From positions 1 through 64,000 of IMG/VR virus record IMGVR_UViG_3300042391_000634: DNA of 64,000 nt; one strand, written 5' to 3'. Below, in pieces: positions 24,774-40,622 of the stretch. A model generated the notes under the pieces. It did no database searches and was not told where the DNA came from. It saw only the letters and a program-made list of their open reading frames with translations. The position numbers and the translations under genes are program-made. Every line of letters starts with the position of its first letter. Within the stretch, counting starts at the first letter, position 1.

Positions 24774-24780
24774 ACCCTGA

Positions 24781-25565
24781 AGGGGACCAAAGGTCCCCGC
24801 AAACTTCCGAGATTGTCACCATTTTACTTCCGAGATTGTCCACGTTTTACTTCCCACTATGTCTCCGACATCCGTGTCGGGAACACCCCCGATTTCCCAC
24901 TCGACCTAATTTTACTACGTTGTTTTCAGGAATAAAATCCCACCTGTAGACCCCTGAAATTTACCCCCATTTTATCCCCGTTATTGACCCTGTTAGAGGG
25001 GTTTTATTTACATGTTTTTATCGTAGGTTGTAAATCGGTATAATAATCCCACTTTTAGTGATATTTATTGATTGTGTATATACCAGCGTCATTTTGGGGA
25101 GAAAGTGGGGAAAAGTGGTAAGTTGTGGGGATTGACCCTTCCGTCAATCGAGACCCATATTCTAAAAATTTCAGATATATAACTGTATTACGGGGTCCTT
25201 CGGACCCCTTCAGGTGTGTCATAGTGTCATACAATGGTATATATGTATATATAATAGGATATGTAATACGTTCATTATTAAGGGACTAATTTCTATTTAA
25301 CATAATACCTGTTATAGGTTCACAAGTTATTAACATTGTCATACACCCTGACGACCGACCGAAGGGAGGGAGGAAACTTACTAACAACTTATCCACATTC
25401 CGTAATACGTCACTTTGCCAGACAATATCACGTTGATAGAATACCCGTTCACAAAACTTGCCAAACAATATTAGAGAACTTTTGGGCCAAACACATTTGT
25501 CCGTCATACATTCGTTCCACTACGGTAATACATAAAACCTGAAGGGGACCCATAGGGTCCCCGTA
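24781..25565. repeat. Non-coding, GC-enriched hairpin/direct-repeat zone at a convergent strand switch
   Basis: GGGGACC-AAA-GGTCCCC (24782), CTTCCGAGATTGTC x2, GGGGTCC-TTCG-GACCCC (25192), GGGGACCC-ATA-GGGTCCCC (about 25544), DnaA box 25389-25397. Confidence 0.6.
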
Positions 25566-25589
25566 ATTATGATTAATGTGTAATACGTA

Positions 25590-26513
25590 TTAATAATCTA
25601 TACCGAAGTTCCCGAAACGAGTTCTTAGAAATGAACGGAATTCTGATTGTTCTTCTTCAGACAGAGGTGAATCCGAAGGAGAGTTCTTTTTACCATCAAC
25701 TATCTCCCACCCAAAATTGGCTGCAACCGTGAACTCAGGATGTAATACTTTGTCTTGTTTGTTGTATGAATTATAATCTTGATGAACAATAAACCCTGCC
25801 TTTTTAACGTCGTAATCACTCAACTCATATGTATGACCTTTCCAAGTTCCCTTTCTAAGAGCTAGAAATACTGTATGGGCTTTCTTAAGTAACTTCTTCA
25901 TATATGGTCCATAGTCATCCGAGAAGGTTGGAAGGTCTGTTGGGGATAATTTATATGTTGATAACAATAGTGACCTTGAAAATAATATATTACCAAGTGG
26001 ACGTGGAGCCGAAACCTTTGTGTTCCATATGTGGTTCTCCATCATGTCCTTTAAGTGAAATATACCCCTCAATGGAAATACATTGATACGTTGTATCTTA
26101 ATGTCATACATGTCCAACAAACTTGTTGGAAAGATAGACGGTTTATCCCTAAGGTCAGGATTAATCTTTATCAAACTATCCACAAAGTCCTCCATACATA
26201 TTGTTAACAAATTTGTTGGGATGACTGGTGTTGAATCCATGTTTGGCATAAAGTCAATATCACATGTAATCTCCCCCAGTACACCTTCTTTGAATCTTTC
26301 TGGTGTGAATGGTATCTCTTCTATACGGATTGAATTATGAATCTCACCCTCGGGAACGATTAGGGTCTTCCAAAAGATATGGTCACTTCTATATTTCTTC
26401 AGGGTCTGAACCAATTTCTCGTTGGACCTTCTTTCAGATTTGAGCTCATCGTTATCGGATGGGATATCTGAAGGTATTGTTTCGTCCTGTTCTCTTAGTT
26501 TACTTAATTTCAT
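25590..26513 (-). CDS. Leader (MKLSKLREQ) plus C-terminal KALKKG domain protein
   Basis: TATTTATA directly upstream on the minus strand; KKAHTVFLALRKG...LRTRFGNFGI. Confidence 0.65.
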   Translation of the reverse strand: MKLSKLREQDETIPSDIPSDNDELKSERRSNEKLVQTLKKYRSDHIFWKTLIVPEGEIHNSIRIEEIPFTPERFKEGVLGEITCDIDFMPNMDSTPVIPTNLLTICMEDFVDSLIKINPDLRDKPSIFPTSLLDMYDIKIQRINVFPLRGIFHLKDMMENHIWNTKVSAPRPLGNILFSRSLLLSTYKLSPTDLPTFSDDYGPYMKKLLKKAHTVFLALRKGTWKGHTYELSDYDVKKAGFIVHQDYNSYNKQDKVLHPEFTVAANFGWEIVDGKKNSPSDSPLSEEEQSEFRSFLRTRFGNFGIDY

Positions 26514-26687
26514 GTATATAAATATTGCCAAACAATATTGACAGTGGATTCCTCCTCAAGGTTTATTTTTTTGCCAAACAATATTCGAGTCATCGTCTTC
26601 TGAGTTACTTTACTATTGACTGTCTACTGTAAACAATAAACCCCCCACAATAGTGGAGGGCTTACTATTGTCGTCCTATTGGGACAA

Positions 26688-26867
26688 TTACGCCGCTAAC
26701 AATTGGTTACGGTATGTAATTGCTGTTCTCTTGTTAGAGAAGTTCTTGCTGTGTTTAGTTCCTTCTACTGATACACGAACACGGTAGCTGTTACCATCAA
26801 AGTATACATTGTTAGAAACTGGCACATAAGTTGTCTTGGTGCGACGGGTTGTTTTTGTTGTTTTCAT
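26688..26867 (-). CDS. Small basic AP2-like DNA-binding protein
   Basis: NVYFDGNSYRVRVSVEGTKHSKNFSNKRTAITYRN resembles the AP2 beta-sheet plus helix; K/T/R-rich N-terminus. Confidence 0.5.
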   Translation of the reverse strand: MKTTKTTRRTKTTYVPVSNNVYFDGNSYRVRVSVEGTKHSKNFSNKRTAITYRNQLLAA

Positions 26868-27141
26868 CTTACTGAATTTAAATTTTAACATTATTGATTA
26901 TATTAAAATATAAAAAAATAAATCCGTAAAAAAAAATAAACGGCAACTATTTTTTCTTTTTCCCAGTAATTGTTTTGCCAAACAACATCCCGAATCCACA
27001 GTGGAACCTTAACTTCTTCTTATATAATCATACCACTCCTCACCCCATCTCTCCTCCATATAGATGAAGTGACCTTTTCTTTCCTCAGTATTAAACATTA
27101 AATACCCTTTAAAGTAATCCTTATACCACCGTAGTTTTCTT

Positions 27142-28061
27142 TTAAACCTTATCATGGTATGTTACATTTACGGTTACCTCATCTAATTTAAATGTATCAT
27201 AGAACTTCTCTAAGACATCTATCTTAGCAAGACCTGTTTCTTCAGGTTCTTGGTAGTAGTGGATGTGTTTCTTAATCTTCTTAATCTCATCCGTAATCCA
27301 TAGTTTAACAAATTGGTCATTCATTTTCTAATAGTTTATATTGTTTATCACCAATAGTATCCAAGATATATGCCACCTCTACTATATCTTCCAAGTCGTA
27401 AGTGGATAGGTCATCGAACTCATCACCATATGGTGTGGTACCTGTTAAGTATTGTCCATCAGACATTGTCTTAACTATGTATGGGACCTTGACCATTGAC
27501 GCGTCGTAGGTATTCTCCTCCGTTACATACACTGTGAACGGGTTGGTAAACTCTATGGTTTCATCAAGTTTGAATAGATTCTCTATCTCATTGCAGAACT
27601 TGGTCTTCAGGTTCTTTACTTCTTCCCTTGAGTTGTAGTTCATATTATTTAATATTAAGTTTGTGGTCAATTGAATATATTTCTTTTATCTTGGACCCAT
27701 CCATATTCACACCATCCTTATTCCAAAACGGTAGGACTCTTGGATTATACTTCACCTGTTGTCCATTGTCGGGGATGAAGTCCTCAGTTCTAATATCGAT
27801 GGTGTCACATAGAACCCACGCACATACCACCTTGTGTTCCCCATTTAATATCTTCATTGCTGTGGTCCTACTATTCTTAAGGACACAATCCTTCATTACC
27901 AACTGAACATCATATGGACTGTAGTATTTGGTATATCCATTTAGGTATTGGACCTTCCACTTCATATAGTTCTCACCTCTCCCGAGGTTGAACCTAACCT
28001 TGATTTTCTTTCCCATATTAATCTTCAGTTTCTTCGTCACAACAATAAACACATTCCCCAT
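27142..28061 (-). CDS. Three hypothetical early proteins (27142-27324, 27317-27670, 27645-about 28013)
   Basis: ORF track; overlapping stops and starts. Confidence 0.6.
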
Positions 28062-28659
28062 CTTCTTCTAAGTCACCTCCACATACTCCACATACATCAC
28101 TCTCGTCCTCATCTTCATCTAAGAGGTCTCTGTCGGAGTTACCAAGATAAGTTATCCTGATTCCTACAATCTTTTCTTTATCCATCATAACCTCCATAGG
28201 ATATTGTCCATCTCCAATACCTGATGAGGTTACCACACCCGTGTCATACGAACCAAATTGGTCCTTATGTATTGTGAACTGACACATCTTCTCATACCAC
28301 TTATCACCACCATCTCTAAAAGGTATTTCGAACGGTTGGTCAAGTGTGGGTGTTGTAATACCTTCTGCTATTTCATCGTTACGGTAACTTGTCATACAGA
28401 AGATTCCACACTGACCTGAGTCAACACCACATTCACTGTGGTCTTCCCACTCAAGTGATACACCATCGTCGGTTATGGATTCGTGAAGTATTGTAATACC
28501 TGATACACGAACACCCCAACCTGTTCCTTCGTCGGACTTTTCAACTTCGACATTGTAGAGACCGGGTAATACATTATCTAATTTGGTTTGACACCAAGTA
28601 TCCAATGAGTAACAAGGATCGGATACCATTACATTTTCGGAGAGAGTAATTTGATTCAT
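28018..28659 (-). CDS. DUF4241-like protein with acidic tail and C-terminal Zn ribbon
   Basis: VSDPCY, GVDSGQCGIF, SSGIGDGQY; CGVCGG..EEDGECVYC. Confidence 0.5.
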   Translation of the reverse strand: MNQITLSENVMVSDPCYSLDTWCQTKLDNVLPGLYNVEVEKSDEGTGWGVRVSGITILHESITDDGVSLEWEDHSECGVDSGQCGIFCMTSYRNDEIAEGITTPTLDQPFEIPFRDGGDKWYEKMCQFTIHKDQFGSYDTGVVTSSGIGDGQYPMEVMMDKEKIVGIRITYLGNSDRDLLDEDEDESDVCGVCGGDLEEDGECVYCCDEETED

Positions 28660-28709
28660 AGTTTTAAGTTTAGGATGTAAAGTTAATAAAGATTTAGAAT
28701 ATCACAAAT

Positions 28710-29210
28710 TTATTTGGAATATATTTTCTTATAGTTATCCACATTTTCTTCTATCTCATATCTCATTACTGTGGATATCTTGTCATACACTCGGTCCATG
28801 AATAACTCATTGCCAGACAATATCGTCACGTCTGCTGTTCCTTCGGGGAAGTATAAATCTATTGGGTCTATAAGAACCCTTACTTCATTAATATCATTAT
28901 CCGACCTGAAGAATGGACAACGACCATACACATAAGTGTTCCTAACAGTGTAGAGTTTAACACACTCTTTCATGTTAGTTAAAGCTCTAATCTGCATAAT
29001 GATTACTTCTAAGTTAGCCAACTGTTGAATGTCCATCTTATGTTTCGAAACCTTGGTTCTATATTCTGTTACAAAGTCTGCCAAACAATATTCGCCTGGC
29101 CCGTCTGTGTTATCACTTCTTGTTATGAACTGGTCATAGGAACTCCTTTCTTTAGAGGTCCCTACAATATTTACAAATACTCCTTCGGTGGTTTTATTTA
29201 CCCTACCCAT
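28710..29210 (-). CDS. Hypothetical protein containing two repeat half-sites and a DnaA box within its coding sequence
   Basis: TGCCAGACAA near 28811, TGCCAAACAA near 29079, TTATCCACA at 28735-28743. Confidence 0.6.
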   Translation of the reverse strand: MGRVNKTTEGVFVNIVGTSKERSSYDQFITRSDNTDGPGEYCLADFVTEYRTKVSKHKMDIQQLANLEVIIMQIRALTNMKECVKLYTVRNTYVYGRCPFFRSDNDINEVRVLIDPIDLYFPEGTADVTILSGNELFMDRVYDKISTVMRYEIEENVDNYKKIYSK

Positions 29211-29423
29211 GTTTTCTTATTTAAAATGTTAAAAAATGCTTCAGTTATTTTGCCAAACCAATTCGACCTGGAGACTCTGGCTGGTCGACCAGAAAAAACC
29301 CTGGTGTTAAAATCGTTCCCTCCATAGTATGGAGTTGGTTTTCTATATGCACTTGCCACACCATATTGGCGGCACCACTCGTCTTGAGGTGGTTGTTTTT
29401 CAGGGTAAGTAGTCTTACTCACT

Positions 29424-30035
29424 TTAGGATTCGACATTGCTTTCTTTTGTTTCGTTATATAATCTTGTTAATTCTTTCTTGTCTTCGTATGATACGAACA
29501 TATATTGGTTAAGGAAGTCTTCTAATGACATCTCTTCGCCCGAGATACTATCTAAACTATAGTCCACTTCAGACCAAAACTCATCTTTAGATAAAATATA
29601 CATTCCCTCAAGGAAACCAAACTCTTGGTCAAAGACATCCAACTCACCATCTTGCCAAGTAAATGTTGTCTCACCTGTAAATCCTACCCCACCTTCAGAG
29701 TAGTAGATGTGTCCATTCACCTGATACATTTTGCACAGATTCTCCATAAAAGGAATGGGAGGACTCCAAGCTGTTTCACAACTAAAAGATATTTCATCTT
29801 TGTTTAATGTAAATGCGTGTCTATCATATGAGATATCCCATTTAGTTCCAAACCAATTTACATTAGTATCATACCATTTCTCTTTGTAATCACCTTCAGA
29901 CATATAGGATGGAATACCTATTAGAGATTTAAACACATCATCATTCTCCTTAAGATTCTTAAGAACAGCGGTGAGGGCTTTAATAGTTCCCTCATTACCG
30001 CTGATTGTAATATTGTTATTGCACCAATTTGGCAT
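29424..30035 (-). CDS. DUF1281/Api92-like ferredoxin-fold protein
   Basis: MPNWCNNNITISG...WYDTNVNWFGTKWD...F.CETAWSPP...Y.EGGVGF.G. Confidence 0.7.
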   Translation of the reverse strand: MPNWCNNNITISGNEGTIKALTAVLKNLKENDDVFKSLIGIPSYMSEGDYKEKWYDTNVNWFGTKWDISYDRHAFTLNKDEISFSCETAWSPPIPFMENLCKMYQVNGHIYYSEGGVGFTGETTFTWQDGELDVFDQEFGFLEGMYILSKDEFWSEVDYSLDSISGEEMSLEDFLNQYMFVSYEDKKELTRLYNETKESNVES

Positions 30036-30291
30036 ATTATAAGAATTTAGTTTTATCGTAGAAGTTATTGTCGAGAGCTTTCTTAATCCCACTAATTAAA
30101 TGACATCTTGGTTCGGTGTCATACACTTCAGGATATTTAACCTTAATTTTCTCTCTTGCGGTATCAAACATAGTTTCGATTACTTCGGGAGTAACTCCTT
30201 TACCTTTTTCAATAAACTTCACAATTTTATTTAATTGTGTTTGACAAGCTGTATCACCAGCTTTACTATACATTTCAAAACTCATAGTATT

Positions 30292-30888: not shown

Positions 30889-31187
30889 TTTTATAAGTTT
30901 AGGATACAAAGATAATCATTATATCATTACACACAAACTTTTTTTGTTAAAATTTTGCTAAAGGATTTTAAATTTCTCACAGACATGCATCTGGTTGATA
31001 TTGTTTGGCAACGTTTGCGCTGGTAAATGCTGCAAATGCGCTCAGGGGGTATTTGTTTGGCAAAATCTTGGTATTGATAATCAATGAGTTATGTTTTGCC
31101 AAACAATATCTGTCTGGTGTGCCTGGTGATTTTTCTGGTAAAACTGGTGAATTGGCTGGTGCGAAGCAACATTGGCACATGCGAAGC

Positions 31188-31216
31188 AAAAAAAATCCCC
31201 CGTATTTCTACGAGGG
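31188..31216 (-). terminator. Repeated intrinsic terminator (CCCTCGTA-GAAA-TACGGGG followed by a U tract)
   Basis: Near-identical copies at about 31191, 33884 and 37250; variants at about 26638, 35039, 36172, 38219, 38808 and 39586. Confidence 0.75.
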
Positions 31217-31640
31217 ACTGAACTAAACTTACGAACCCACCTATCTAAAACTTACTTACTTTGTAATACGTCTTTTAATAATCTGAAAGAACCTTTGATT
31301 ATAGTTGTCTCTTTAATTGCATCATCTATTGATTTAAAACTCTTGTGTAATACGAAAGTCTTACCATCATTAGAATACCAAACATCGTATGTGTTTTTAC
31401 TTTGGGATAAAATAATCTTCGTTGTCATAATAATACGGATTGATTAAGATGTAAAGGTAATACATTTTATATTACAAACAAAAAAATTTAATTATAAACA
31501 TTATTTTTCCACATTTATTTTTGCCAGACAACATCCCTCAGGGGCCTTACATCTTGTCATACAGCAAATAAAAATGGGTATCATTTCTGACACCCATTCT
31601 ATAACAAACACTACTATATTGAACACTTCTATATAATATA

Positions 31641-33577
31641 CTAAATATTTTCCACTTTATCAACTTTGTTGGAATAAACCTCCAATACATCACCCAACTG
31701 ATTCATATTGTATATTTCAGCCGTCGACTCTCCACCATTTTCACTTGGGTCTAATGTTTCTTTGACACCATCTATTTCTTCCCAACTGATTTCATCGAGG
31801 TCTCCCGATTCATACATTTCTTTGGCAATCTTCACGGCTTGGTTTAAGTCCTCAGCTTTAACTTCAAAGTCGGTTCTCATCCACGTGGTAATCTTTTGGT
31901 CTATAAAGAATTCAAATGTTTTCATTGTTACTTATTTAATTCGTTAATTAATGTGATATCAGCTTCGGACATTTCATCTACCATTACTTTACTTAACTCG
32001 TCGAGATGTTTGCCAGAGAATTTGTCATACCCACCCATTTGGTATTTGGGATAAACAATTTTTGTTTCGGTGTCGATTACAGATGCAACTGATTTTAATT
32101 CTACTATCATGTTAATTAATTTAATTTTCTTATTGACATATAATTTTCTAATTCATCCAAAGAAATACGACCATCGTTAGAACTATAATAACCTTGTAGT
32201 TCGTATCGTTTTTTCCATTTATCAAATGCCTCAAATGCTTTTTTCTTTGAGGGGTAATATGGTTTATCGAACTCAATCGTAAACCCGTCGGGGGATAATA
32301 CTTGATACTTTATCATAGTCCTGCGTTTTTAATTATACAATCTAATTTATATTCAAACTCTTGGGTCATACCCTCAATGTCATACACCCTTTTAGTTTCA
32401 TCGTCGTCGGGATGATAAAATGAGATGTCCACTTTAATTACATTTTCATTGGTTTTTTTAACCATTGTTTGTGAATATTCGGTTTCGTGTTTAGTGTCCA
32501 TATGTTGAGAACCACTAAATCTATTTTGTGAATGAACAACTACAACTTGGTGAGGACCTACCGGTTCCCAACCATCGTTAATTTTATTACCAACTACTAC
32601 TGAAAGTCCTTCGGGACTACTTGATGCTACGATTTTATATTCCATTTGATTTAATTCATCATTAAGTTAAAAAATTTGATACCTAACTCTTGTAATTCTT
32701 TACACTTTCTTTTTTTTACTACTTCATCACGAACGTACATTGACTTATCGGATGTAATACCTAAGTCCATCATAGAAAAGAAGTGTTCCCACTTACCACC
32801 AACGAATAACTCACCTGTAAATCTTTCAAGTGCATTGTAACATTCGTAGGTCATTTTTAATTTAACCCCATTAACTTTCGGTTCTTGTATTACTAACACA
32901 TCGTGGGATGTATCCCTTGTGTGTGATTTACTTTCGTAGATTACTTTATTTTTCATTTGTGATAGTTTTAAATTGATTTAGATTACAAAGATAATTTAAT
33001 ATTGTGTTAGGGAAATGTTAAAGTGTTAACGATATAAGGTAACATAATCACCAAAATACTTTTCAAAAACATTTAATAAGTTTTCGTAATCACCTTTCAT
33101 CATTTCAGATTGAATTACTTTACCATCCAAACCTAATTGTTTTGCAAACTTGGATGCCATACCAATTAATACAAATGCGTTTCCATCGGGACCAGTTAGG
33201 TCGATTTCAATTCCTGATTTTTTTTCGTTGATTGACTTTATCATAACTTAATTTTTATTTTTGTTTATAATTTTTTTCTCAAACCATTGTTTCATTGTTA
33301 ATGGTGTTAGGGCATCGGATAAATCAGTTAGAATATATTCTCCTGATTTAATTTTAGTTTCAGTTTCTTTTTTCGATTCCCCCAAAAATTGATTCCTATA
33401 CTTTCCCGTTGTCTTGGAATAATTCCAATAGGTCTCATCCAAATAAACTCTCCCGTCTTCAATCTTTACAATAATACTTTCGTAGGACTGAAAGATTCTT
33501 AAACTTTCGTTTCTAATTACAATCTGATTGGGAACTTTGTTCCCGTTCGAACTTGTTAAATTTCTAATTGTTGTCAT
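31641..33577 (-). CDS. Seven small early hypothetical ORFs (31641-31925, 31928-32110, 32116-32316, 32313-32645, 32651-32956, 33026-33244, 33248-33577)
   Basis: ORF track; TATCTTTG -7 elements upstream (CAAAGATA at about 32986 and about 33596 on the + strand). Confidence 0.6.
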
Positions 33578-33931
33578 ATTATTTGATTTAGGATACAAAG
33601 ATAATTCATTTTAAATTATACTACAAACTATTTTATGTTAAAACTTTGTTAAGATGTAATACGAATGTTTCACCTGTCGTCCGAGCTATGATATTGTTTG
33701 GCATTGTAATACGTTTGCCAAACAACTTTGGATGTCATCGGAACATGTGGGACTTCGGGAACATCAGGAACATCTTTTTGGGAACATTGGGAACATTGGG
33801 AACATGCGCACTGTGAATATCTTCTGGCAAATGCCAAACAATATTCATAGCTCACCAGGTGCTAGTATTTCCTATCGGACAATAAAAAACCCCCGTATTT
33901 CTACGAGGGTTCGGGGGACAAACAATAACCA

Positions 33932-34777
33932 TTAAACCATATGAACCAAATCTGAAAATATCTCTTGTTCTACTTGACCGATACCACCGAACATTTTTGC
34001 CTCGGTATTATCGTTCTTACTATAAGAGTGTGTTGTGTATTTTGTTACACCACTAAACAAACCCCAAAGGTTATCACCTTTACCTTGAATCTCACCATTT
34101 AAGTCAATATAGAATCTACTTAAATTGTTTTTAGTTCTTGTAGATAATTCATCACTATCTAAACTAAATTCAGGTTTGATGCCAAACAACTTTCGTGTCA
34201 CCTTCTCCTTCAACAAATCGTCAAAACGTGTTTCACTCAATTCAGTAATGAATCTGAATGTTTCTTTTTCTTCTTCCAATACAACGTCTAATCTTCTACA
34301 AATGTCTTCCACTTTTAAAGACATAGACTTTGTGTGTCGAACTTTGTTTTGAAGTCCACTCATCACTCTAAAGAATGTGTTCATACAACTGATAGTCGTA
34401 TTAGAATGACCGAATGCTAATGATGTAGAACCATCAAAAGAATTCACACCTGTTAAATAACCCTCAATTCGGTCGTTACCCAATTTAAGGTCGTTACCTT
34501 TTAATTGAACGTAAATACGTCCACCACCTTTGAACTCACCACCACGATGAATTTCTAAACCTGTTCTACCTGATACTTGATGTAATAAGTCCATCAACTC
34601 ATGGTTCTGATAAGGAACATAACCATCAGAGTGTAAACCCACAATATCTTGTGTGTCGTTTCTAACGATTGCTTTTTTGTTTGGAATACTAATACCACTA
34701 ATGGTTTGTAATTCCTCCTGACGTACCGTCCAATTAAGGTTGGTCTTGTCTAATAATGTTTTTACTTGTTCGTTCAT
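33932..34777 (-). CDS. DUF932-family phage/plasmid protein
   Basis: W.V..E.L, AIVR.DT..IVG.HS..Y...QN, NSFDGSTS..F..S.....CMN, LWGLFSGVTKY.TH. Confidence 0.8.
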   Translation of the reverse strand: MNEQVKTLLDKTNLNWTVRQEELQTISGISIPNKKAIVRNDTQDIVGLHSDGYVPYQNHELMDLLHQVSGRTGLEIHRGGEFKGGGRIYVQLKGNDLKLGNDRIEGYLTGVNSFDGSTSLAFGHSNTTISCMNTFFRVMSGLQNKVRHTKSMSLKVEDICRRLDVVLEEEKETFRFITELSETRFDDLLKEKVTRKLFGIKPEFSLDSDELSTRTKNNLSRFYIDLNGEIQGKGDNLWGLFSGVTKYTTHSYSKNDNTEAKMFGGIGQVEQEIFSDLVHMV

Positions 34778-35089
34778 ATAAATTAATTTAGAGTGTAAAG
34801 GTAGGTCTTTTATATTACCCACCAAATAATATTTGTTAACACTTTGTTAAAGAATATGTAATACGAATGGGATCCACTGTGCCATCTGAATATTGATTGG
34901 CAATTGCCAAACAAATTGTCTACGGTGCCCTGAACCAAGTCGTGTTGTCCTGTTTTTTATATAATAAAGTGGACAAGTGTAATACGTTTGCCAAACAATA
35001 TATTTGCATGCATGATGCAGGAAAGTTTGGACATAAAAAAAGGGATTGTCATACGACAACCCCCTCTTACTTTATCACTACTAACCCTC

Positions 35090-35836
35090 TTAAATGTTTC
35101 TCAAATTAATTCTACTTTCTTTGTTTCTACTAAAATTATAGATTTCTTCTATCATTTTAATATATTCATCTACACTACCACAAAAGTGAATATTAGTTGG
35201 TCTTAACTTTACCTTACGAACAAACTCACTAAAAGAAAAGTCTTTACATCTTGTTAAAGTTTTGATAATCGCTCTTACGAATGTTGAACGATTATAACCC
35301 TCAAACAAAGGTTTCAATTCCATAATGTTCATCGCCCATTCAATCGCCTTATCCATATTCTTTGTAACAAACTTACCACTCTCAAAGTTCTCTCTATCAC
35401 AACCACTTAACGAATTCGTACATAACATCATACATTCAGTTGGTCTTAATTCGGGATATTGTTTCATAAAGTTATTTAACTTAATGTAGTGTGGATTTCC
35501 CTCTACAACAAACCCGTGAATATGGTCGGTTATCGCCCAATTCTTTTGACGACTATTTAAACTTCTAATTGTTTCAAAACCTGCGGTCGTTTCTAAAATA
35601 TAAGAAATAGGAACCCCTACTTCCATAGCGGCGGTTACTCTATGTTGTCCATCAATGATTTCACCTTTCTTGTTGATAACAACATAAGAACCTCTTTCCC
35701 AACCACGAACTTTCATATTGTTTACAATATTCTTTACGTGGGATTTGTTAATAACTCTATTGTCACTTCTAAATGTGAAAATAGAATAATCTTTTGTTTG
35801 GTAAACTTCGTTTACTTTTTTTCCGTTACGTATCAT
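35090..35836 (-). CDS. ParB/Srx N-terminal-like protein
   Basis: NR.IN..HVK.I...M, VVINKKGEIIDGQHRVTAA. Confidence 0.7.
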   Translation of the reverse strand: MIRNGKKVNEVYQTKDYSIFTFRSDNRVINKSHVKNIVNNMKVRGWERGSYVVINKKGEIIDGQHRVTAAMEVGVPISYILETTAGFETIRSLNSRQKNWAITDHIHGFVVEGNPHYIKLNNFMKQYPELRPTECMMLCTNSLSGCDRENFESGKFVTKNMDKAIEWAMNIMELKPLFEGYNRSTFVRAIIKTLTRCKDFSFSEFVRKVKLRPTNIHFCGSVDEYIKMIEEIYNFSRNKESRINLRNI

Positions 35837-36225
35837 TTTTATTTTTGTTCAGATTTTATCCTGTCCCCGAGATTGATTAATAATGATAGAACAAAGATAT
35901 GTTGTATATTATTATATTCCAAGTATTATTTAGAATATTTTAGTTAAGAATATGTTAAAGTGTAATACGAAGATTTCCCCGCTGTTGCTGCAGTACGATA
36001 TTGATTGGCAAATTTTTGACCAGTGTTGATGCAGCTCAGGACCAGTGACGATATTGATTGGCAAATGCCAAACAAGTTTCAGCGCATGCGTTGTGGGACT
36101 CGACTAAGTGTAATACGTTTGCCAAACAATATTCCCTGAACTTCACAGTGCCGCTGAATTTGATAAACAAAAAAAAGGATAGTCTTTCGACTACCCTTCT
36201 TCACCTTTTCCAACCTTATGTATTT

Positions 36226-36771
36226 CTACACAAGTTCTTTTTCCAAGTGTTGTAATACGGACTTACCTTCACTTTCACATTCTTCTTCACCAAAATATCC
36301 ACCACAACTTTCAACTAATGTTTTATGTTCGTGTCCTTTATCACAAGTTTCTATTTCATATACTTCATAACAATAAACTTCACCCGTTAGATACTTATCG
36401 TAAGTTTCAATTTCACCTTTAAGGTATTCTTCAACTTTAGTTTCATCAATACCTTCTTTCTTTATCTTATGTTTAGATACAAAGATAAAACCAACCTGTC
36501 CACTATCCCAACGACAATCAAACGGACTTGTTGATATAGTTATACCCGAGTGGTCATATAGATACAAAGGTAAGATAACAACTTCACCTTCATTAGTAAT
36601 AATACCTTCTTTTAATTCGTCCCAACTATCATAATCTTCAGTTCGATAATCAGTCTTGTCACCAAGTTCATACCTTTTGTGAAAACATACCATCGTTCCC
36701 AAGTTATCCCAATCGGTTCGAGGGTTCATTGGGTTTGTGTCTTGTTCAATTTTTAATTCAAATTTTTTCAT
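36226..36771 (-). CDS. Conserved phage hypothetical protein
   Basis: NPRTDWDNLGTM.CFH.RY.LGD...LPLYLYDHSG.TI...WDSGQVGF...SCGGYFG. Confidence 0.65.
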   Translation of the reverse strand: MKKFELKIEQDTNPMNPRTDWDNLGTMVCFHKRYELGDKTDYRTEDYDSWDELKEGIITNEGEVVILPLYLYDHSGITISTSPFDCRWDSGQVGFIFVSKHKIKKEGIDETKVEEYLKGEIETYDKYLTGEVYCYEVYEIETCDKGHEHKTLVESCGGYFGEEECESEGKSVLQHLEKELV

Positions 36772-37305
36772 ATTGTTTGTTTTAGAGTATAAAGGTAAGT
36801 CTTTTATATAACATACCAAAATATTATCGTTAAGACTTTGTTAAAGAATATATCACCTGTTGGGACCGGCATCGATTGAATATTGGTTGGCAATTGCCAA
36901 ACAAATAGCAGCGCGCGCTGCTTTTCACGGGGTATTGTAATACGTTTGCCAAACAATAACCGCACAGGCCTGTGGCGCATGGTCTACAGCATTTCTTGTT
37001 CATTAATTCTTCTTGTTCACGTTCCGTGAACATAGGTAATACGTGAACACTTTTGCCAGACAATATTTCCTGAATTCGAACCGTCGGGGTGTATTCCCTC
37101 CACTATGTATTACGAAAGTCAATGGTAGTAAGGGTTTAATAATTCTTTAGAGAACTTTTAGTAAGTTTTTAGCAAATATTGTAGCAAATAGTGTGAAACT
37201 TGCCAAACAACTTGTCTACAGCGCGCACCCGGTAGATTCTCTACCAAATAAAAACCCCCCGTATTTCTACGAGGGGAACACAATATAAATCACAAACAGA
37301 ACAAA

Positions 37306-37898
37306 CTAATCTACCATATCATATTTCCAATCCATTTTTTCCATAACCTTCTCAATCTTGTCATACACTTTGGAATCTTCTACTCGGTTGAACATTTCAT
37401 CAAACACAAGTATAGAACTCGGGTCACAAAAATAGGTGTTTGTTTCTTTAACAACAACAACGTTGTATTCATCAACATTATACCAATTACCAACTCTTTG
37501 TAATTTCATATCAATTAATTTTTAGGGTTTAAGTAGATTTCCATTCTCGCGGGAACGACTTTTGCCAGATTACATTCATCACAACATTCGTCATCTTCAT
37601 TTTTAGTTTCTAACGGGTGTGGGTCATTACCATAACCTTCTACTTCTTTGTCACAAAGACAACAGATAAACTTTTCCATTTTTATTTAATTTAATACTTG
37701 AAAAATATCCTTACCAATAATCAATCCTAATGTTCTTCCGTTATCCCATTTAACATTGACAACATCAAAACCAACATTATACACAACTCCTTCACGACCA
37801 ACTAAAATTGGTTGTGGGTCATCTTCCATTGGTTCAATAAGTTTAACTCTTTTACCCATAAGTAATTGTGGGTTTACAAGGAAATCATTTACTATCAT
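37306..37898 (-). CDS. Small ORFs 37306-37509, 37515-37679 (Cys-rich CCLC...CCDEC; absent from the track) and 37686-37898 (DUF4314-like)
   Basis: Manual translation MEKFICCLCDKEVEGYGNDPHP...CCDECN; G.RV.LI..M.DD..PI..G.EG.V...VKWDNGRTLGLI.G.D. Confidence 0.55.
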
Positions 37899-38265
37899 AG
37901 TGTTTGTTTTAGAGTGTAAAGATAAGTGTAATACTTTTATATTACAAACTCATTTAGTTAAAACTATGTTAATGTGTAATACGACCAAACCCGTGGAGGA
38001 AGACCGGATAATTTATTGTTTGGCAAAATGTAAAGTAAAACCCCCACAATATGTAATACGAATTCACCCGTGGGACGAGTTTACTCAGGAGATATTGATT
38101 GGCAACCTTGTTACCTTTTTATATAAAACCATAACATAAGTCAAGTTTTTGAATCAATAAACTTGACATCTGCCAAACAATATCCGGATGGAGACGACAG
38201 GTGAGAGGTGTGGAAATAAAAAACCCCCTACTTTCGTAGAGGGTCTTGGTCTTTGGGAGGAATAA

Positions 38266-38532
38266 TTAATTCAATGGAATTTCTTTACCAATACCATACT
38301 CACAAATTTTGTGTAGTAAGGGTAAAACTCTACTACCGATAATCTCATTCAAATACTCATCTCTGTCAAATTCATCATCGGTGTCATCTTCAATGTTTTT
38401 ACCCGTTTGGTCAAAATACATATCACCAATCATTTCAAGAAATTCGTTATCACTCATTTCTTCAATCAATTGTGTTAATCGGTCAGTAATAACTCCATTA
38501 ACAATTTCTAATACTTTTTCTTTTTTGTTCAT
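38266..38532 (-). CDS. Hypothetical protein
   Basis: Start reassigned to MNKKEK, downstream of the conserved TACCTTTACACTCTAAA module. Confidence 0.6.
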   Translation of the reverse strand: MNKKEKVLEIVNGVITDRLTQLIEEMSDNEFLEMIGDMYFDQTGKNIEDDTDDEFDRDEYLNEIIGSRVLPLLHKICEYGIGKEIPLN

Positions 38533-39630
38533 TTTATTTGTTTTAGAGTGTAAAGGTAATACAATTATAGGACATACCAAAATTCATCAGTTAAAACTTT
38601 GTTAATGTAATACGTTTTCACCCGGGTGTAACTGATTGTTGTGTGGCAATTGCCAAACAAGTTCACCGATGGGATCCACGGTGTGTGTCGTAATACGAAT
38701 CTTTGCCAAACAATAGTTCGGATACTTCACGGGGAAGTGTTCCTTCATTAGAATAATTGCCACACAACATCTTAGCGGAACCCTGACTCAAGTCCGTTGT
38801 GGACATAAAAAACCCCCACCATAGAAATGATGAGGGTAAATCTAAAATGAAAACACAGACAATTACATATAAGACCATTTACGACCAAGAATATTGTTTA
38901 CCATTACACGAAACGATTTTTTATACAAACGATACATTCTATCCTCTCCCGTTGAAGTTCCAATTTTATCACTGAACTTAAAAGTCCATATAAAACGAAC
39001 AATAAAGAAAGGAGTTAAAATAAACACGATAATGATAGTTTGCCAAAGAAATTTCAATAGATACTTCATAATTTTAAAATTTTAAATGAGTTTTTAAATT
39101 ACCCTACAAGGACAATGTAGGACATAAAATAGGTTAATGAGAAACTGAACATTAGTAGTCCGTAGATTTTGATTTTCTTTTCCATTTGATTAAGTAGTTT
39201 AGGACACAAAGATAATACTTTTATCTTTATATTTTCTTATCTATTAAGAATTGGTCGTTAAAATTATGTTAATGTAATACCAAGTGGTGAGGAGTTACGA
39301 AGACACAGGAGAATATTGTGTGGCAAATCGGATATGGTTACGAATATTAACGGATATATACGGATATTGCCAATCAATATCACATTCTACAAGGAATCCA
39401 ACATTCGTTGTATGACAATTGCCAAACCATATTATTTTCTACAACCGAGATCCCTTCCATTTTTATTGTTAAACCTATGTTAAAGGTTTGCCAAACAACA
39501 ATTCGGATTTGGATTCTGTGTTCGGTGTTATGTATGACAATTGCCAAACAATAGTTCGGATTACTTCGTAAGGTTCGGGTCAAAAAAAAACCACTCCTTT
39601 CGGAGTGGTCGGTTTGTAGGGGAACAAACC

Positions 39631-40185
39631 TTAAAGAATTGTGTATTCTTGTTTAAGAATTTTAATTCTTTTAATGTGGTCTAAACTCATTACCTTATAG
39701 TTTAAGGTATTGTCTAAACCATTTTGATACTTTGAGTAGTCCGTTTTCGTATCAATAAGGTATTGAGTGAACATTACCTTTTCAATACTATTACCCTCAA
39801 ACACATACTTTGTATCAAGGTAAGAACTATCGTGGTCTTGGTAACGAAAGTAAAATTTCGTTGGGTCGGACTTTAATACTACCAAACTTTTTGATACTAA
39901 CTGATAAGGACTTTCTTTCTTATCCTCGTTTACGATAGGGGTAATTCCTTCGGTCTTATACTTTCTACCTAATTGACCTTCGTAATCAAAACCCGTTTGG
40001 ATATTTGATAACTTTTGTTCAATCAAAACTAAATCGTAATAAGGGTTAGGGTTACTTTTACCACTTACTTTGAAGTCAAGATATTTGTTCATCTTAACTT
40101 TTTTTAATGTTGTCAATCCCACATTAGGGACAAAGATATCTATACCTGATAGTATATCTTTTAGTTCTGTTTTTGTAATGTTCAT
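39631..40185 (-). CDS. Hypothetical protein, first gene of the inverted island
   Basis: Start MNITKTE; TATCTTTG -7 element upstream. Confidence 0.6.
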   Translation of the reverse strand: MNITKTELKDILSGIDIFVPNVGLTTLKKVKMNKYLDFKVSGKSNPNPYYDLVLIEQKLSNIQTGFDYEGQLGRKYKTEGITPIVNEDKKESPYQLVSKSLVVLKSDPTKFYFRYQDHDSSYLDTKYVFEGNSIEKVMFTQYLIDTKTDYSKYQNGLDNTLNYKVMSLDHIKRIKILKQEYTIL

Positions 40186-40235
40186 ATATCTTATTGTTTT
40201 GTTCCCACAAAGATATAGTATATTCCAATACAAAG

Positions 40236-40278
40236 TTAGAATATTCTAATAAAGTTATCCACATTCCGTTGTGGATAA
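40236..40278. promoter_or_regulatory. Palindrome TTAGAATATTCTAA plus an inverted pair of perfect DnaA boxes
   Basis: Palindrome 40236-40249; TTATCCACA 40255-40263 and TGTGGATAA 40270-40278, 6 bp apart. Confidence 0.65.
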
Positions 40279-40319
40279 AGTGTTGATATCGTGGGGGTTC
40301 ACCTTCGGGAACAAAGTTG

Positions 40320-40610
40320 TTTGGCAGTGGGGTGTATAGGGGTGTAGGTAGTGGTAGGGGGGGTCCCCCCTCCCGTATCCCCCCTTTATATAGTCATTTT
40401 GGGGGGGTCTAAACAGGGGGTCAATGCCACGACTGAAATTTTTCCAGAAATTTTTGGGAACATTTAAGGTTTTTTACTGCTCACATTTAAGACTGAAAAT
40501 TAGAACTATATTTCTAATCCATATAATAACTCTTATTATTCGGGGGGTAAAACCTGTAATTGGAAATATATGTCTAAAAACTGAAAAAAAAATTCCAGAA
40601 AATTTTTGGG
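40320..40610. other. G-run-rich non-coding zone at the divergent strand switch (possible terminus, pac or origin)
   Basis: GGGGTGTA x2, GGGGGGGTCCCCCC (40357-40370), GGGGGGGTCT, GGGGGTC; direct repeat ACTGAAA...TTCCAGAAA(A)TTTTTGGGA near 40432 and 40580. Confidence 0.45.
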
Positions 40611-40622
40611 ATATTTATACAT

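What the first reader, a model, noticed from the sequence alone, without database searches (positions are those of the whole stretch)
25414..40327. About 30 TGCCAAACAA boxes plus about 20 GTAATACG boxes confined to the island: an unexplained protein-binding or recombination lattice
Seen: half-sites occur in both orientations, clustered between terminator and next promoter (for example 25414, 25458, 26525, 26571, 26974, 31001-31110, 31521, 33691-33725, 33826, 34897, 34978, 36001-36129, 36885-36956, 37053, 37199, 38016-38180, 38636-38712, 39316-39552). Head-to-head dyads TTGGCAA(T/A)TGCCAAACAA and four exact 21-mers TGTAATACGTTTGCCAAACAA are present. The sequence between boxes is GC-richer and unrelated from copy to copy. 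Some boxes lie within coding sequence (28811, 29079). None were seen in the other 49 kb. Inference: a cis-acting system for coating, anchoring or protecting the first-entering DNA, partition-like (parS-like) loading, or site-specific cassette shuffling. I cannot match it to a known element.
Basis: partly seen in the sequence, partly recalled or inferred. Interest (0 to 1): 0.85.

Follow-up and report, generated by a model that had tools for sequence, protein, structure and literature searches.

The report
Junction boxes between phage gene cassettes
In a 335-kb lake-water jumbo phage, a 15-kb block of small early genes is built from promoter-gene-terminator cassettes joined by a spacer of fixed geometry that carries short inverted boxes; relatives keep this design but change the box sequence and reshuffle the cassettes, so the boxes are most likely protein-recognition sites of a cassette junction rather than a partition or DNA-coating lattice.

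Summary
TGCCAAACAA occurs 27 times (0.16 expected), 25 of them in 25.4-40.4 kb. GTAATACG occurs 18 times, all on the + strand and all in the island. Composite forms occur nowhere else in the whole 335.6-kb contig.

The boxes follow a strict grammar. In the direction of the (minus-strand) genes it reads: terminator T-tract, about 43 nt of GC-rich DNA, box, CGTATTACA, about 40 nt, box dyad, about 38 nt, CGTATTACA, TTAACn6TTAAC, then a Bacteroidota-type -33/-7 promoter. Promoters with no terminator upstream lack the boxes.

Distant relatives keep this architecture but carry different inverted arms (for example TTTAGTCTGGA/TCCAGACTAAA). GTATTAC and the promoter stay constant. The arms are usually not complementary, and their spacing varies from 1 to 44 nt. 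This points to duplex recognition by a phage-specific protein, not a hairpin.

Cassette order and content differ between relatives. Homology switches at the boxes, and one box-flanked unit is inverted.

The closest known kind is the PeSL promoter-terminator cassette of T4-type phages, here with an added recognition module. No evidence supports parS-like loading or coating of entering DNA. A site-specific recombination system is not excluded. The protein that reads the boxes is unknown.

The parts
25263..40420 (-). Island of about 29 small minus-strand genes arranged as promoter-gene(s)-terminator cassettes. It holds all junction modules.
   Evidence: ORF layout and GC skew. Minus-strand terminators. 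Motif confinement.
33578..33931 (-). Junction module: terminator, box, GGAACAT x6 array, box+CGTATTACA+box, CGTATTACA, TTAACn6TTAAC, promoter.
34778..35089 (-). Canonical junction module upstream of the DUF932 gene. It holds the 21-mer at 34978-34998 and the dyad at 34893-34914.
35837..36225 (-). Canonical junction module upstream of the ParB/KorB-like gene. It holds the 21-mer at 36109-36129, the dyad at 36054-36075 and a single box at 36001-36010.
   Evidence: In alignment A3 the boxes are invariant while the spacers are replaced.
36772..37305 (-). Long junction module. It holds the 21-mer at 36936-36956, the dyad at 36883-36904, variant boxes at 37054 and 37201, and a parS-like inverted repeat near 37015-37031.
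37899..38265 (-). Junction module with boxes at 38016, 38095 and 38171. Its 37-nt box+spacer unit (38171-38207) recurs at 100% identity in the opposite orientation in L007.
38533..38862 (-). Junction module with the dyad at 38639-38660 and boxes at 38704 and 38758.
39070..39630 (-). Junction module. The box-flanked unit at 39316-39380 (CGGATAT x3) is inverted relative to L003, L007 and L008.
30889..31251 (-). Junction module with boxes at 31001, 31053 and 31097. The loop between two of them holds the palindrome ATTGATTATCAAT, which is also kept in L137 and L139.
25380..25589 (-). Terminal junction at the island's left edge: two boxes, CGTATTAC, then a DnaA-box-like TGTGGATAA.
26514..27008 (-). 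Two short junctions (boxes at 26526, 26572 and 26976) flanking the 67-aa DNA-binding-domain gene.
40186..40420 (-). First promoter region of the island: one forward box at 40317-40326 and an inverted pair of DnaA-box 9-mers at 40255-40286.
34835..34850 (-). Example of the TTAACn6TTAAC element immediately upstream of the -33 element. There are 8 copies, all on the minus strand and all in the island. Their high-coordinate ends are at 33652, 34850, 35958, 36844, 37972, 38605, 39272 and 39483.
   Evidence: In L002 the element abuts the -33 TTTG.
34796..34826 (-). Example of a host-type (Bacteroidota) promoter, TTTG-N19-TAnnTTT(G/A). Nine such full matches on the minus strand lie in the island, each just upstream of a gene.
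   Evidence: Metatranscriptome contigs end at 34766-34775, just downstream of it.
35090..35836 (-). ParB/KorB-fold protein (DGQHR motif). It is a candidate regulator but probably not the box reader.
   Evidence: PHROG 12305. AF2 model plus Foldseek matches to ParB-CTP and KorB-KorA structures, probability 1.0. Its phylogeny is discordant with box type.
26688..26891 (-). 67-aa basic protein with an integrase arm-type/AP2-like DNA-binding fold. It is a candidate box reader, but this is only a lead.
   Evidence: Atlas look-alikes. AF2 pLDDT 82. Foldseek top hits are arm-binding domains of HPI and P4-like integrases, probability 0.87-0.91 with weak E-values.

Best explanation
The boxes are the recognition elements of a repeated 'cassette junction'. 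The island is a run of small early, host-takeover-type genes. Each transcription unit starts at a host-type (Bacteroidota -33/-7) promoter and ends at an intrinsic terminator.

Between each terminator and the next promoter lies a spacer of fixed geometry. About 43 bp after the T-tract comes a 14-bp asymmetric box, TTGCCAAnCAAnAT, whose TAT end faces a GC-rich arm. More boxes follow at 12 bp (inverted dyad) or about 52 bp. The strictly gene-oriented core CGTATTACA is interleaved with them. The last box lies about 51 bp before the promoter's upstream element, TTAACn6TTAAC.

I propose that the boxes are read as duplex DNA, one protein subunit per box, by a phage-encoded sequence-specific protein. 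This builds a nucleoprotein boundary between neighbouring units, which would insulate them and/or switch them off or on together. Because a dozen near-identical junctions lie in direct order, they are also the places where recombination adds, removes, swaps, reorders and locally inverts cassettes, as PeSL elements do in T4-type phages.

Shown here: the grammar, its confinement to the island, its link to terminator-promoter junctions, lineage-specific arms with a constant core, the lack of arm complementarity, and cassette mosaicism with switch points at the boxes.

Inferred: that a protein (rather than RNA or single-stranded DNA) reads the boxes, that this protein is phage-encoded, and that its role is insulation or co-regulation.
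For: 1. The boxes are non-random and confined to the island. This holds in the window and in the whole 335.6-kb contig.

2. The grammar and spacing are fixed in six related loci. T-tract to first box is 41-48 bp (mode 43). Box-to-box spacing is 12 bp in 20 of 92 pairs and 50-55 bp in 32 of 92. Last box to TTAACn6TTAAC has a mode of 51 bp. The intervening sequence is unrelated between junctions, which implies selection on distance.

3. Internal promoters with no upstream terminator keep TTAACn6TTAAC and the -33/-7 elements but have no boxes (window 32957-33025).

4. Relatives with 56-62% DUF932 identity keep the same layout of terminator, GC arm, inverted arms, GC arm and promoter, but with different arms: TTTAGTCTGGA, TTGTTTCGCA, TGTTTGGCT/GCCAATCAT and TTGGTTGGCG. 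GTATTAC and the promoter are unchanged.

5. Conservation has sharp edges: 14 bp are invariant while the flanks are replaced. Gene conversion alone would not produce this.

6. Twenty-eight of 37 non-redundant arm pairs are not complementary in the central triplet. Tight dyads are almost always AAA on the upstream arm and AAT on the downstream arm. Arm spacing ranges from 1 to 44 nt. RNA folds are not exceptional, with z-scores from -0.2 to -2.2.

7. Metatranscriptome contigs cover the gene bodies but none of the junctions (weak evidence).

8. Cassette order and content differ between relatives. Identity steps occur at junctions: DUF932 about 90%, the ParB-like gene about 60%. Homology blocks start or stop at the boxes, and there is a box-flanked inversion. 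Identical box+spacer units recur at other junctions and in the other orientation.

9. The island encodes DNA-binding candidates.
Against: - No binding protein has been identified.
- The ParB/KorB-like protein does not track the box type.
- The arm-type-domain protein is only a fold-level lead with weak E-values.
- Most boxes lie 100-250 bp upstream of the promoter, not over it. Simple occlusion is therefore excluded, and the regulatory mode is a guess.
- The layout 'lineage-specific word + TAT + GC-rich' also looks like a phage-polymerase promoter.
- The compact forms in L139 and L136 (9-10-bp arms around a 9-11-nt oriented core) look like recombinase core sites or HUH stem-loops.
- The RNA evidence comes from unstranded, low-depth assembled contigs, which cannot show small or antisense RNAs.
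- Lineage-specific arms could equally reflect different hosts rather than a phage protein.
Confidence: 0.42

Rival explanations
1. The junctions are crossover sites of a dedicated site-specific recombination system. In this reading the inverted arms bind a recombinase, and the strictly oriented, lineage-invariant GTATTAC is the asymmetric exchange region. This resembles a tyrosine or serine recombinase core site, a shufflon sfx site or an integron attC site. With all sites in direct order, cassettes could be excised as circles and re-inserted.
For: - The compact forms TTGTTTGGC-A(c)GTATTAC-GCCAAACAA in L139 and TTGGTTGGCG-ttcGTATTACa-CGCCAACCAA in L136 have the arm-core-arm layout.
- The core is constant and always in one orientation, while the arms vary by lineage.
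- Cassette reordering, replacement and a box-flanked inversion are seen between relatives.
- A stand-alone integrase arm-type DNA-binding-domain protein is encoded in the island.
- sfx sites are likewise asymmetric, with one conserved arm (PMC11852207).
Against: - No integrase, invertase, transposase or HUH family was found among 68+ window proteins, and there is no HUH motif in island proteins.
- The centre between the arms varies from 1 to 44 nt, and in the window lineage GTATTAC is not between the tight dyad arms.
- The central dinucleotide of the dyads varies (AT, AA, TT).
- The inverted unit is only about 62 bp, too short for a recombinase synapse.
- All rearrangements seen are equally explained by homologous recombination or template switching at 14-21-bp repeats.
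- The fixed distances to the terminator and promoter are not needed for a recombination site.
Confidence: 0.2
2. The boxes are promoters for a phage-encoded RNA polymerase or sigma factor. The lineage-specific word would be the specificity region, TAT the melting region and the GC-rich arm the initially transcribed sequence. Forward boxes would re-express cassettes later in infection. The more numerous reverse boxes would fire antisense into the upstream gene to shut early genes off, or would make short GC-rich RNAs.
For: - The box consensus is AT-rich upstream, then TTGCCAAACAA, then nAT, then 22 nt at 46-68% GC.
- Analogous layouts with other words are found in L136-L140.
- One set of boxes per terminated unit, and none at internal promoters, fits a scheme of one promoter per transcription unit.
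- Confinement to one temporal class of genes.
Against: - No position-specific start nucleotide follows the TAT.
- The arm lengths are constrained to a few bp relative to the terminator and promoter, which a transcribed leader does not need.
- Most boxes point away from the downstream gene. In L139 nearly all exact TGCCAAnCAA boxes are in reverse orientation; its forward arms are mostly the CGCC variant.
- Metatranscriptome contigs stop at the proximal host-type promoter, and none covers a junction (weak).
- No polymerase or sigma family was seen in the window.
Confidence: 0.13
3. The boxes are ends of small selfish palindromic elements (MITE-, REP/BIME- or Correia-like). These would have colonised harmless terminator-promoter gaps and would be moved by a phage-encoded transposase. 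Any effect on the phage would be secondary.
For: - Clusters of short inverted boxes in alternating orientation, mixed with other motifs, in extragenic positions after terminators.
- Lineage-specific sequences.
- Identical box+spacer units at several places and in both orientations.
- The box begins TG...CA at its outer ends.
Against: - The position relative to the T-tract and promoter is fixed within a few bp in all lineages, unlike random insertion.
- The boxes are confined to one 15-kb island of a 335-kb genome that has other intergenic gaps.
- There are no target-site duplications.
- The interior between the arms can be as short as 1-2 nt.
- No transposase was found in the window.
Confidence: 0.1
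4. The boxes are parS/operator sites of the island's ParB/KorB-like protein. It would load there and slide or spread, either to partition or anchor the DNA or to silence the early promoters at a distance, as KorB does on plasmid RK2.
For: - A ParB/KorB-fold protein is conserved in the island.
- The sites are numerous and lie at variable distances upstream of promoters. This resembles KorB operator classes (my own knowledge, not checked in a paper here).
- The perfect palindrome TTGGCAATTGCCAA occurs in some dyads.
Against: - The protein's relationships are discordant with box type. The window copy is 62-63% identical to L138/L141, which have different arms, but only 51-53% identical to L132/L135/L002, which have identical arms.
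- Most boxes are single asymmetric sites, and partner spacing is variable.
- A separate, better parS-like inverted repeat (ATGTTCACGnnnCGTGAACA plus a third half-site) lies once in the island and is kept in L003 and L007.
- No ParA-type ATPase is present in the window.
Confidence: 0.06

Closest known systems
PeSL (promoter-early stem-loop) regulatory cassettes of T4-type phages (Arbiol et al. 2010, PMC2839356; Comeau et al. 2014, PMC4122927)
   Same: - Repeated composite terminator plus host-type early promoter motifs between small non-essential genes.
- Concentrated in a hyperplastic region.
- Insertions, deletions and replacements between relatives map to them.
   Different: - Here an extra module lies between terminator and promoter: 14-bp asymmetric boxes in both orientations, the oriented CGTATTACA core and GC-rich arms of fixed length. 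It spans 120-400 bp.
- The box sequence changes between lineages while the promoter does not.
- The host is a Bacteroidota-type organism, and no T4 core genes were seen in the window.
- Mini-circles were not tested.
R64-type shufflon sfx sites and integron attC sites
   Same: - Short asymmetric or imperfect inverted sites between cassettes.
- Lineage-specific arms.
- Rearranged cassette order, and at least one inversion bounded by inverted sites.
   Different: - No Rci or IntI recombinase was seen.
- The cassettes carry their own promoter and terminator.
- The R''/R' core motifs of attC are absent.
- The spacing between arms is highly variable.
- Shufflon segments encode protein ends, whereas here the inverted piece is about 40 nt of non-coding DNA.
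REP/BIME mosaic extragenic elements of enterobacteria (my own knowledge, not checked in a paper here)
   Same: Mosaic clusters of short imperfect inverted units in alternating orientation, mixed with other short motifs, placed after terminators between transcription units. Proposed roles there are protein binding (gyrase, IHF) and insulation.
   Different: - Different sequence and no GTAG-hairpin signature.
- The arms are not selected for pairing.
- Confined to one island of a phage genome, with fixed distances to the promoter.
Dispersed asymmetric operator regulons: P1 C1 operators, RK2 KorB OB sites, integrase arm-type sites (my own knowledge, not checked in a paper here)
   Same: Many copies of a 10-17-bp site, single or as inverted pairs, in front of several operons. 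One protein coordinates them all, and site and protein are lineage-specific.
   Different: - No reader protein has been identified.
- The sites do not overlap the promoters.
- The sites are tied to the upstream terminator as much as to the downstream promoter.

Membership tests
PeSL-type mobile regulatory cassette | A composite of a terminator stem-loop and a host-type early promoter between small genes. | tested here: met
   There are 8 or more minus-strand intrinsic terminators. Each is followed by a TTTG-N19-TAnnTTT(G/A) promoter just before the next gene.
PeSL-type mobile regulatory cassette | Concentrated in a hyperplastic region of variable, mostly unknown genes. | tested here: met
   Confined to the 15-kb island. 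Gene content there differs between relatives, and most genes have no known family.
PeSL-type mobile regulatory cassette | Indels, replacements and reordering between relatives map to the repeats. | tested here: met
   Homology blocks end at the boxes. Identity steps occur at junctions. The order of the ParB-like and DUF932 cassettes is swapped in L002, L138, L139 and L141.
PeSL-type mobile regulatory cassette | Excised mini-circles formed between neighbouring repeats. | not testable with these tools
PeSL-type mobile regulatory cassette | Carried by a T4-type myovirus. | tested here: inconclusive
   No T4 core gene family was found among the window proteins, but only 64 of 335 kb were seen.
parS/ParB (or KorB-OB) system | A ParB-family protein encoded with the sites. 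| tested here: met
   The AF2 model of 35090-35836 matches ParB-CTP and KorB-KorA structures at probability 1.0. It also hits PHROG 12305.
parS/ParB (or KorB-OB) system | The site is a 13-16-bp palindrome with fixed half-site spacing. | tested here: not met
   The box is an asymmetric 14-mer and most copies are single. Partner spacing is 1-44 nt, and 28 of 37 pairs have non-identical centres.
parS/ParB (or KorB-OB) system | Site sequence and reader protein change together. | tested here: not met
   The window protein is closest to those of L138/L141, which have different arms, and farther from L132/L135/L002, which have identical arms.
parS/ParB (or KorB-OB) system | A partner ParA-type ATPase. 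| tested here: not met
   No ParA/CbiA/AAA_31-type family was found among the window proteins. The rest of the genome was not seen.
Integron attC / shufflon sfx | A dedicated tyrosine recombinase encoded beside the array. | tested here: not met
   No integrase or recombinase family was found in the 64-kb window. The remaining 271 kb were not examined.
Integron attC / shufflon sfx | Sites with two arms around a short core of fixed length. | tested here: inconclusive
   Met in L139 and L136 (9-10-bp arms, 9-11-nt centre holding GTATTAC). Not met in the window lineage or in L002 and L140, where the centre is 1-44 nt.
Integron attC / shufflon sfx | Rearranged forms coexisting within one population. 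| not testable with these tools
Only between-relative inversion and reordering were seen.
Phage-polymerase promoter | Oriented towards the genes it serves, with transcripts starting just downstream. | tested here: inconclusive
   The boxes occur in both orientations, and most point antisense. No RNA contig covers a junction, but the data are unstranded, low-depth contigs.
HUH Rep origin (stem-loop with ..TATTAC loop) | A perfect stem with the nick motif in the loop, plus a Rep gene. | tested here: not met
   In the window lineage the arms are mostly non-complementary, and GTATTAC lies outside the tight dyads. There is no convincing HUH/Y motif (one HIH in the ParB-like protein) and no Rep family in the island or window. 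Compact stem-loops with the motif exist only in L139 and L136.

The most novel reading that the evidence does not exclude
The junctions could be the sites of a phage-borne cassette-exchange machine, an integron- or shufflon-like system (or an HUH-nickase system) not yet described.

In this reading, a lineage-specific recombinase binds the inverted arms and exchanges strands in the invariant, oriented GTATTAC core. Self-contained promoter-gene-terminator cassettes, many of them candidate anti-defence genes, would then be excised as circles, captured, reordered and traded between jumbo phages.

The compact stem, ..GTATTAC loop and stem forms in L139 and L136 would be the ancestral site. The box lattices of the window would be expanded versions of it.
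Probability: 0.15. Interest if true: 0.85.

Novelty: new variant of a known kind. Interest (0 to 1): 0.6.

Why it matters
Early 'host-takeover' regions of large phages are where anti-defence genes turn over fastest, yet the DNA rules that let such genes be swapped while staying correctly expressed are known only for T4-type phages (PeSLs).

Here an uncultivated freshwater jumbo phage, probably of Bacteroidota/Chitinophagaceae, shows a more elaborate, precisely spaced junction. It has a constant oriented core and arms that change between lineages.

If the arms are read by a phage protein, this defines a new regulator-operator pair controlling a whole early gene set. It would also give a portable insulator/boundary part for Bacteroidota.

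If the junctions are recombinase sites, this would be an integron-like gene-capture system in a virus.

Either way, the grammar gives a sequence signature for finding early or anti-defence islands in metagenomic phage contigs.

Tried and rejected
- **Chance or assembly artefact.** Rejected.
- **Known RNA families or tRNAs in the window.** None found.
- **Structured RNA or hairpins from the junctions.** Fold z-scores were only -0.2 to -2.2, and the arms are mostly non-complementary.
- **Sigma-54 reading of TGGCA-N6-TTACA.** Considered from sequence and dropped, because the gap between box and CGTATTACA varies from 2 to 10 nt.
- **Bacteroidota -7 box reading of TACGTTTG on the + strand.** No -33 partner, and it is present only in the 21-mers.
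- **ECF-type -35/-10 reading of CGTA.** No common upstream hexamer.
- **CRISPR-like mini-arrays.** The repeat units are inconsistent, and no hits for the motif were found in the literature.
- **DNA wrapping (gyrase-like) phased on the box.** Short words recur at lags of 9, 11 and 22 nt in some arms. However, only a few junctions have them, and the GC profile shows no 10-bp phase relative to the box.
- **Chi-like words.** The private words differ between junctions.
- **Boxes in coding sequence as functional sites.** The one tested, 34180, follows from LFG codons and is absent in L002.
- **GenBank phage relatives.** None found.
- **A 14-mer scan of IMG/VR.** Too unspecific to be useful.
- **The crude intergenic versus coding tally.** Spoiled by spurious ORFs and not used.
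- **Pfam/NCBIfam/PDB sequence searches of island proteins.** Gave little.

Full report
**What the window is**

The window is 100% identical to loci L001 and L006 of IMG/VR contig IMGVR_UViG_3300042391_000634, which is 335,630 bp long. Its coordinates equal contig coordinates 1-64,000. No GenBank phage is similar.

Sixteen lake or freshwater metagenome runs hold 38-97% of the sampled words of 33.5-39.5 kb. The sequence is therefore real and recurrent. The only bacterial-genome hits to the 21-mer are three short MAG contigs, two of them binned as Chitinophagaceae. The gene promoters fit the Bacteroidota -33 TTTG / -7 TAnnTTTG type; that consensus is from my own knowledge of Bacteroides and Flavobacterium promoter studies. 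The likely host is therefore a freshwater Bacteroidota.

**Checking the observation**

- TGCCAAACAA occurs 27 times against 0.16 expected, and 25 copies lie in the island.
- GTAATACG occurs 18 times against 1.6 expected, all on the + strand and all in the island.
- With one mismatch allowed, 47 of 50 box hits lie in the island.
- The box extends to T-TGCCAAnCAA-nAT. The 5' side is AT-rich, and the 22 nt after the TAT end are 46-68% GC, in a genome of about 30-34% GC.
- In the whole 335.6-kb contig, the 21-mer and the dyad pattern occur only inside the island.

**Anatomy of the island**

All island genes lie on the minus strand. Read in gene direction, each long intergenic region has the same order of parts:

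1. The intrinsic terminator of the upstream unit.
2. A GC-rich arm.
3. A reverse box (TTGTTTGGCA), followed after 2-10 nt by CGTATTACA.
4. An arm of about 30-35 nt.
5. A reverse box abutting a forward box (the dyad).
6. An arm of about 25-32 nt.
7. A second CGTATTACA.
8. TTAACn6TTAAC.
9. TTTG-N19-TAnnTTT(G/A), a short leader and the ATG.

The distances are narrow. T-tract to first box is 41-48 bp (mode 43). Box-to-box spacing is 12 bp in 20 of 92 pairs and 50-55 bp in 32 of 92. Last box to TTAACn6TTAAC has a mode of 51 bp.

CGTATTACA (15 of 15 copies) and TTAACn6TTAAC (8 of 8 copies) occur only in gene orientation and only in the island. Nine of the 18 minus-strand full matches to the host-type promoter pattern in the window lie in the island, each in front of a gene.

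**The boxes belong to the junction, not the promoter**

In L002 several promoters lie inside operons with no terminator upstream. They keep TTAACn6TTAAC directly abutting the -33 element but have no boxes and no CGTATTACA. Every promoter that follows a terminator has them. The window's short gap at 32,957-33,025 behaves the same way.

**Transcription**

Assembled metatranscriptome contigs from four lake runs lie on the gene bodies: 33,881-34,775; 35,084-35,870; 36,381-36,580; 37,315-37,899; and 38,244-38,527. None lies on a junction.

Contigs over the DUF932 gene end at 34,766-34,775, one of them running straight into adapter sequence. This is just downstream of the proximal promoter. It fits transcription from the host-type promoter to the terminator. 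The evidence is weak, because the data are unstranded, low-depth, and blind to small RNAs.

**Relatives**

Six loci with the same boxes show the same grammar. More distant loci were fetched with the DUF932 protein. They keep the layout of terminator, arm of about 45 nt, inverted arms, arm of about 45 nt, A-rich or upstream element and promoter. Their arm sequences differ:

| Locus | Arm sequences |
|---|---|
| L140 | TTTAGTCTGGA / TCCAGACTAAA |
| L137 | TTGTTTCGCA / TGCGAAACAA |
| L138, L141 | TGTTTGGCT / GCCAATCAT |
| L136 | TTGGTTGGCG / CGCCAACCAA |
| L139 | TTGTTTGGC(A) / (C)GCCAAACAA |

GTATTAC (sometimes GTATGAC or GTCATAC) stays between or beside the arms in gene orientation in all of these. 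L142 (42% identity) has only promoters and no junction. So both arms change together between lineages, while the core and the host promoter do not.

**Duplex recognition rather than hairpins**

- Of 37 non-redundant adjacent arm pairs, 28 differ in the central triplet.
- Tight dyads are nearly always AAA on the upstream arm and AAT (or another variant) on the downstream arm.
- Arm gaps range from 1 to 44 nt.
- Folds of six junction segments give z-scores from -0.2 to -2.2.
- In an alignment of four orthologous junctions the boxes are invariant while the arms between them are substituted or replaced.

Sharp 14-bp conservation with unrelated flanks argues for selection on a recognition word. The lack of pairing and the variable gaps argue against an RNA or single-stranded-DNA stem. 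They fit one protein subunit per box.

**Recombination**

Cassette order and content differ between relatives. The ParB-like and DUF932 cassettes are swapped in L002, L138, L139 and L141. The cassettes between the first island gene and the DUF4314 gene differ in the window, L003, L007 and L008.

Between the window and L003, identity is about 90% in DUF932, about 60% in the ParB-like gene and about 70% in the next gene. The steps fall in the junctions.

Homology of the first cassette ends just after the first box in both L003 and L007. Other homology blocks begin or end at CGTATTACA.

The unit at 39,316-39,380 (box, CGGATAT x3, box) is inverted in the window relative to L003, L007 and L008. A 37-nt box+arm unit (38,171-38,207) is 100% identical to two forward copies in L007 but reversed. 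A 78-nt module is reversed and sits in another junction in L003. One arm family (…GGACGACAGGTGA…) has nine members at different junctions.

These data show that junctions are exchange points. They do not tell site-specific recombination from homologous recombination or template switching.

**Candidate readers**

The 248-aa protein at 35,090-35,836 carries a DGQHR motif and hits a ParB-like PHROG. Its AF2 model (pLDDT 78) matches ParB-CTP and KorB-KorA structures at probability 1.0. However, its relationships are discordant with box type. A separate parS-like repeat lies near 37,015-37,031 and is conserved in L003 and L007. It is therefore an unlikely box reader.

The basic 67-aa protein at 26,688-26,891 looks like a stand-alone integrase arm-type/AP2 DNA-binding domain. 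The support is Atlas look-alikes at score 0.80, an AF2 model with pLDDT 82, and top Foldseek hits to HPI and P4-like integrase arm-binding domains at probability 0.87-0.91 but E-values of about 0.3. This is a lead, not a result.

No recombinase, transposase, HUH, polymerase or sigma family was found among the window proteins. Several island proteins are very acidic, with net charge from -13 to -37. This fits an early anti-restriction or takeover region, which is an inference.

**Verdict**

The closest known kind is the PeSL promoter-terminator cassette of T4-type phages, which mediates modular shuffling in hyperplastic regions (PMC2839356; PMC4122927). This element shares the terminator plus host-promoter composite, the location and the evolutionary behaviour. 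It adds a precisely spaced recognition module with lineage-specific arms and an invariant oriented core.

I take it to be a protein-bound junction (boundary or co-regulation) that also serves as the crossover point (confidence 0.42). Rivals are:

- a dedicated site-specific recombination system (0.20)
- phage-polymerase promoters (0.13)
- selfish palindromic elements (0.10)
- ParB/KorB operators (0.06)

Noticed in passing
window 40255-40286; 25381-25389; L007 about 8640-8660; L005; L140: Perfect DnaA-box 9-mers (TTATCCACA/TGTGGATAA) form an inverted pair in the island's first promoter region, and one sits next to CGTATTAC at the island's far end. In relatives, TGTGGATAAC replaces TTAACn6TTAAC just upstream of some promoters.
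   Followed up: partly
window about 37000-37040: A parS-like inverted repeat, ATGTTCACGnnnCGTGAACA plus a third GTGAACA half-site, lies in the junction two genes upstream of the ParB/KorB-like gene. It is conserved in L003/L132 and L007/L135. It is a better candidate site for that protein than the boxes.
   Followed up: partly
window 33740-33806; 31114-31161; 39329-39368: Some GC-rich arms hold private short words repeated at 9-12-nt steps: GGAACAT x6, CTGGTG x4 and CGGATAT x3. GTTCC-type arrays recur in L003, L136 and the distant L137, so at least that array is conserved. Its function is unknown.
   Followed up: partly
window 24774-25380 and 40340-40620: Long non-coding stretches flank the island, with G-runs and C-runs (for example GGGGGGATACGGGAGGGGGGA...). 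The right-hand one is conserved in L003. They could be an origin, a phage-specific promoter or a non-coding RNA. Rfam found nothing.
   Followed up: no
window 28018-28659, 29424-30035, 36226-36771, 27317-27643, 31641-31925, 38266-38532: Several island proteins are strongly acidic, with net charge from -13 to -37. They may be DNA-mimic or anti-restriction-type early proteins. DUF932, DUF4314, DUF1281_C and L5 gp82-like families are also present.
   Followed up: no
window 35084-35087: RNA contigs from three independent metatranscriptome runs all begin within 4 nt of each other, just past the stop codon of the ParB-like gene and about 45 nt before its terminator would end the transcript. This could be a processing site, an antisense start or an assembly break.
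   Followed up: no
window 38100-38170; L003 (original coordinates about 3100-3180): A 78-nt module holds the AT-rich palindrome CCTTTTTATATAAAACC next to the hairpin GTCAAGTTT...AAACTTGAC. It lies in opposite orientation and in a different junction in L003. A similar TTATATAAAA element is at 34955-34964.
   Followed up: partly
window 266-24773 and 40623-64000: The flanking plus-strand regions encode sugar-nucleotide and cell-wall enzymes: BKACE, NAD epimerase/dehydratase, DegT aminotransferase, cytidylyltransferase, glycosyltransferases, hexapeptide transferase, glucosaminidase and a chitinase-like lysozyme. There is also an HNH homing endonuclease at 44070-45380. No structural or replication genes were recognised.
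   Followed up: no
L128-L130 (genome contigs): The exact 21-mer occurs in three short MAG contigs, two binned to one Chitinophagaceae MAG and one to an Acidimicrobiaceae MAG. They carry the same box grammar. They are probably phage fragments co-binned with a host, which gives a hint to the host.
   Followed up: partly
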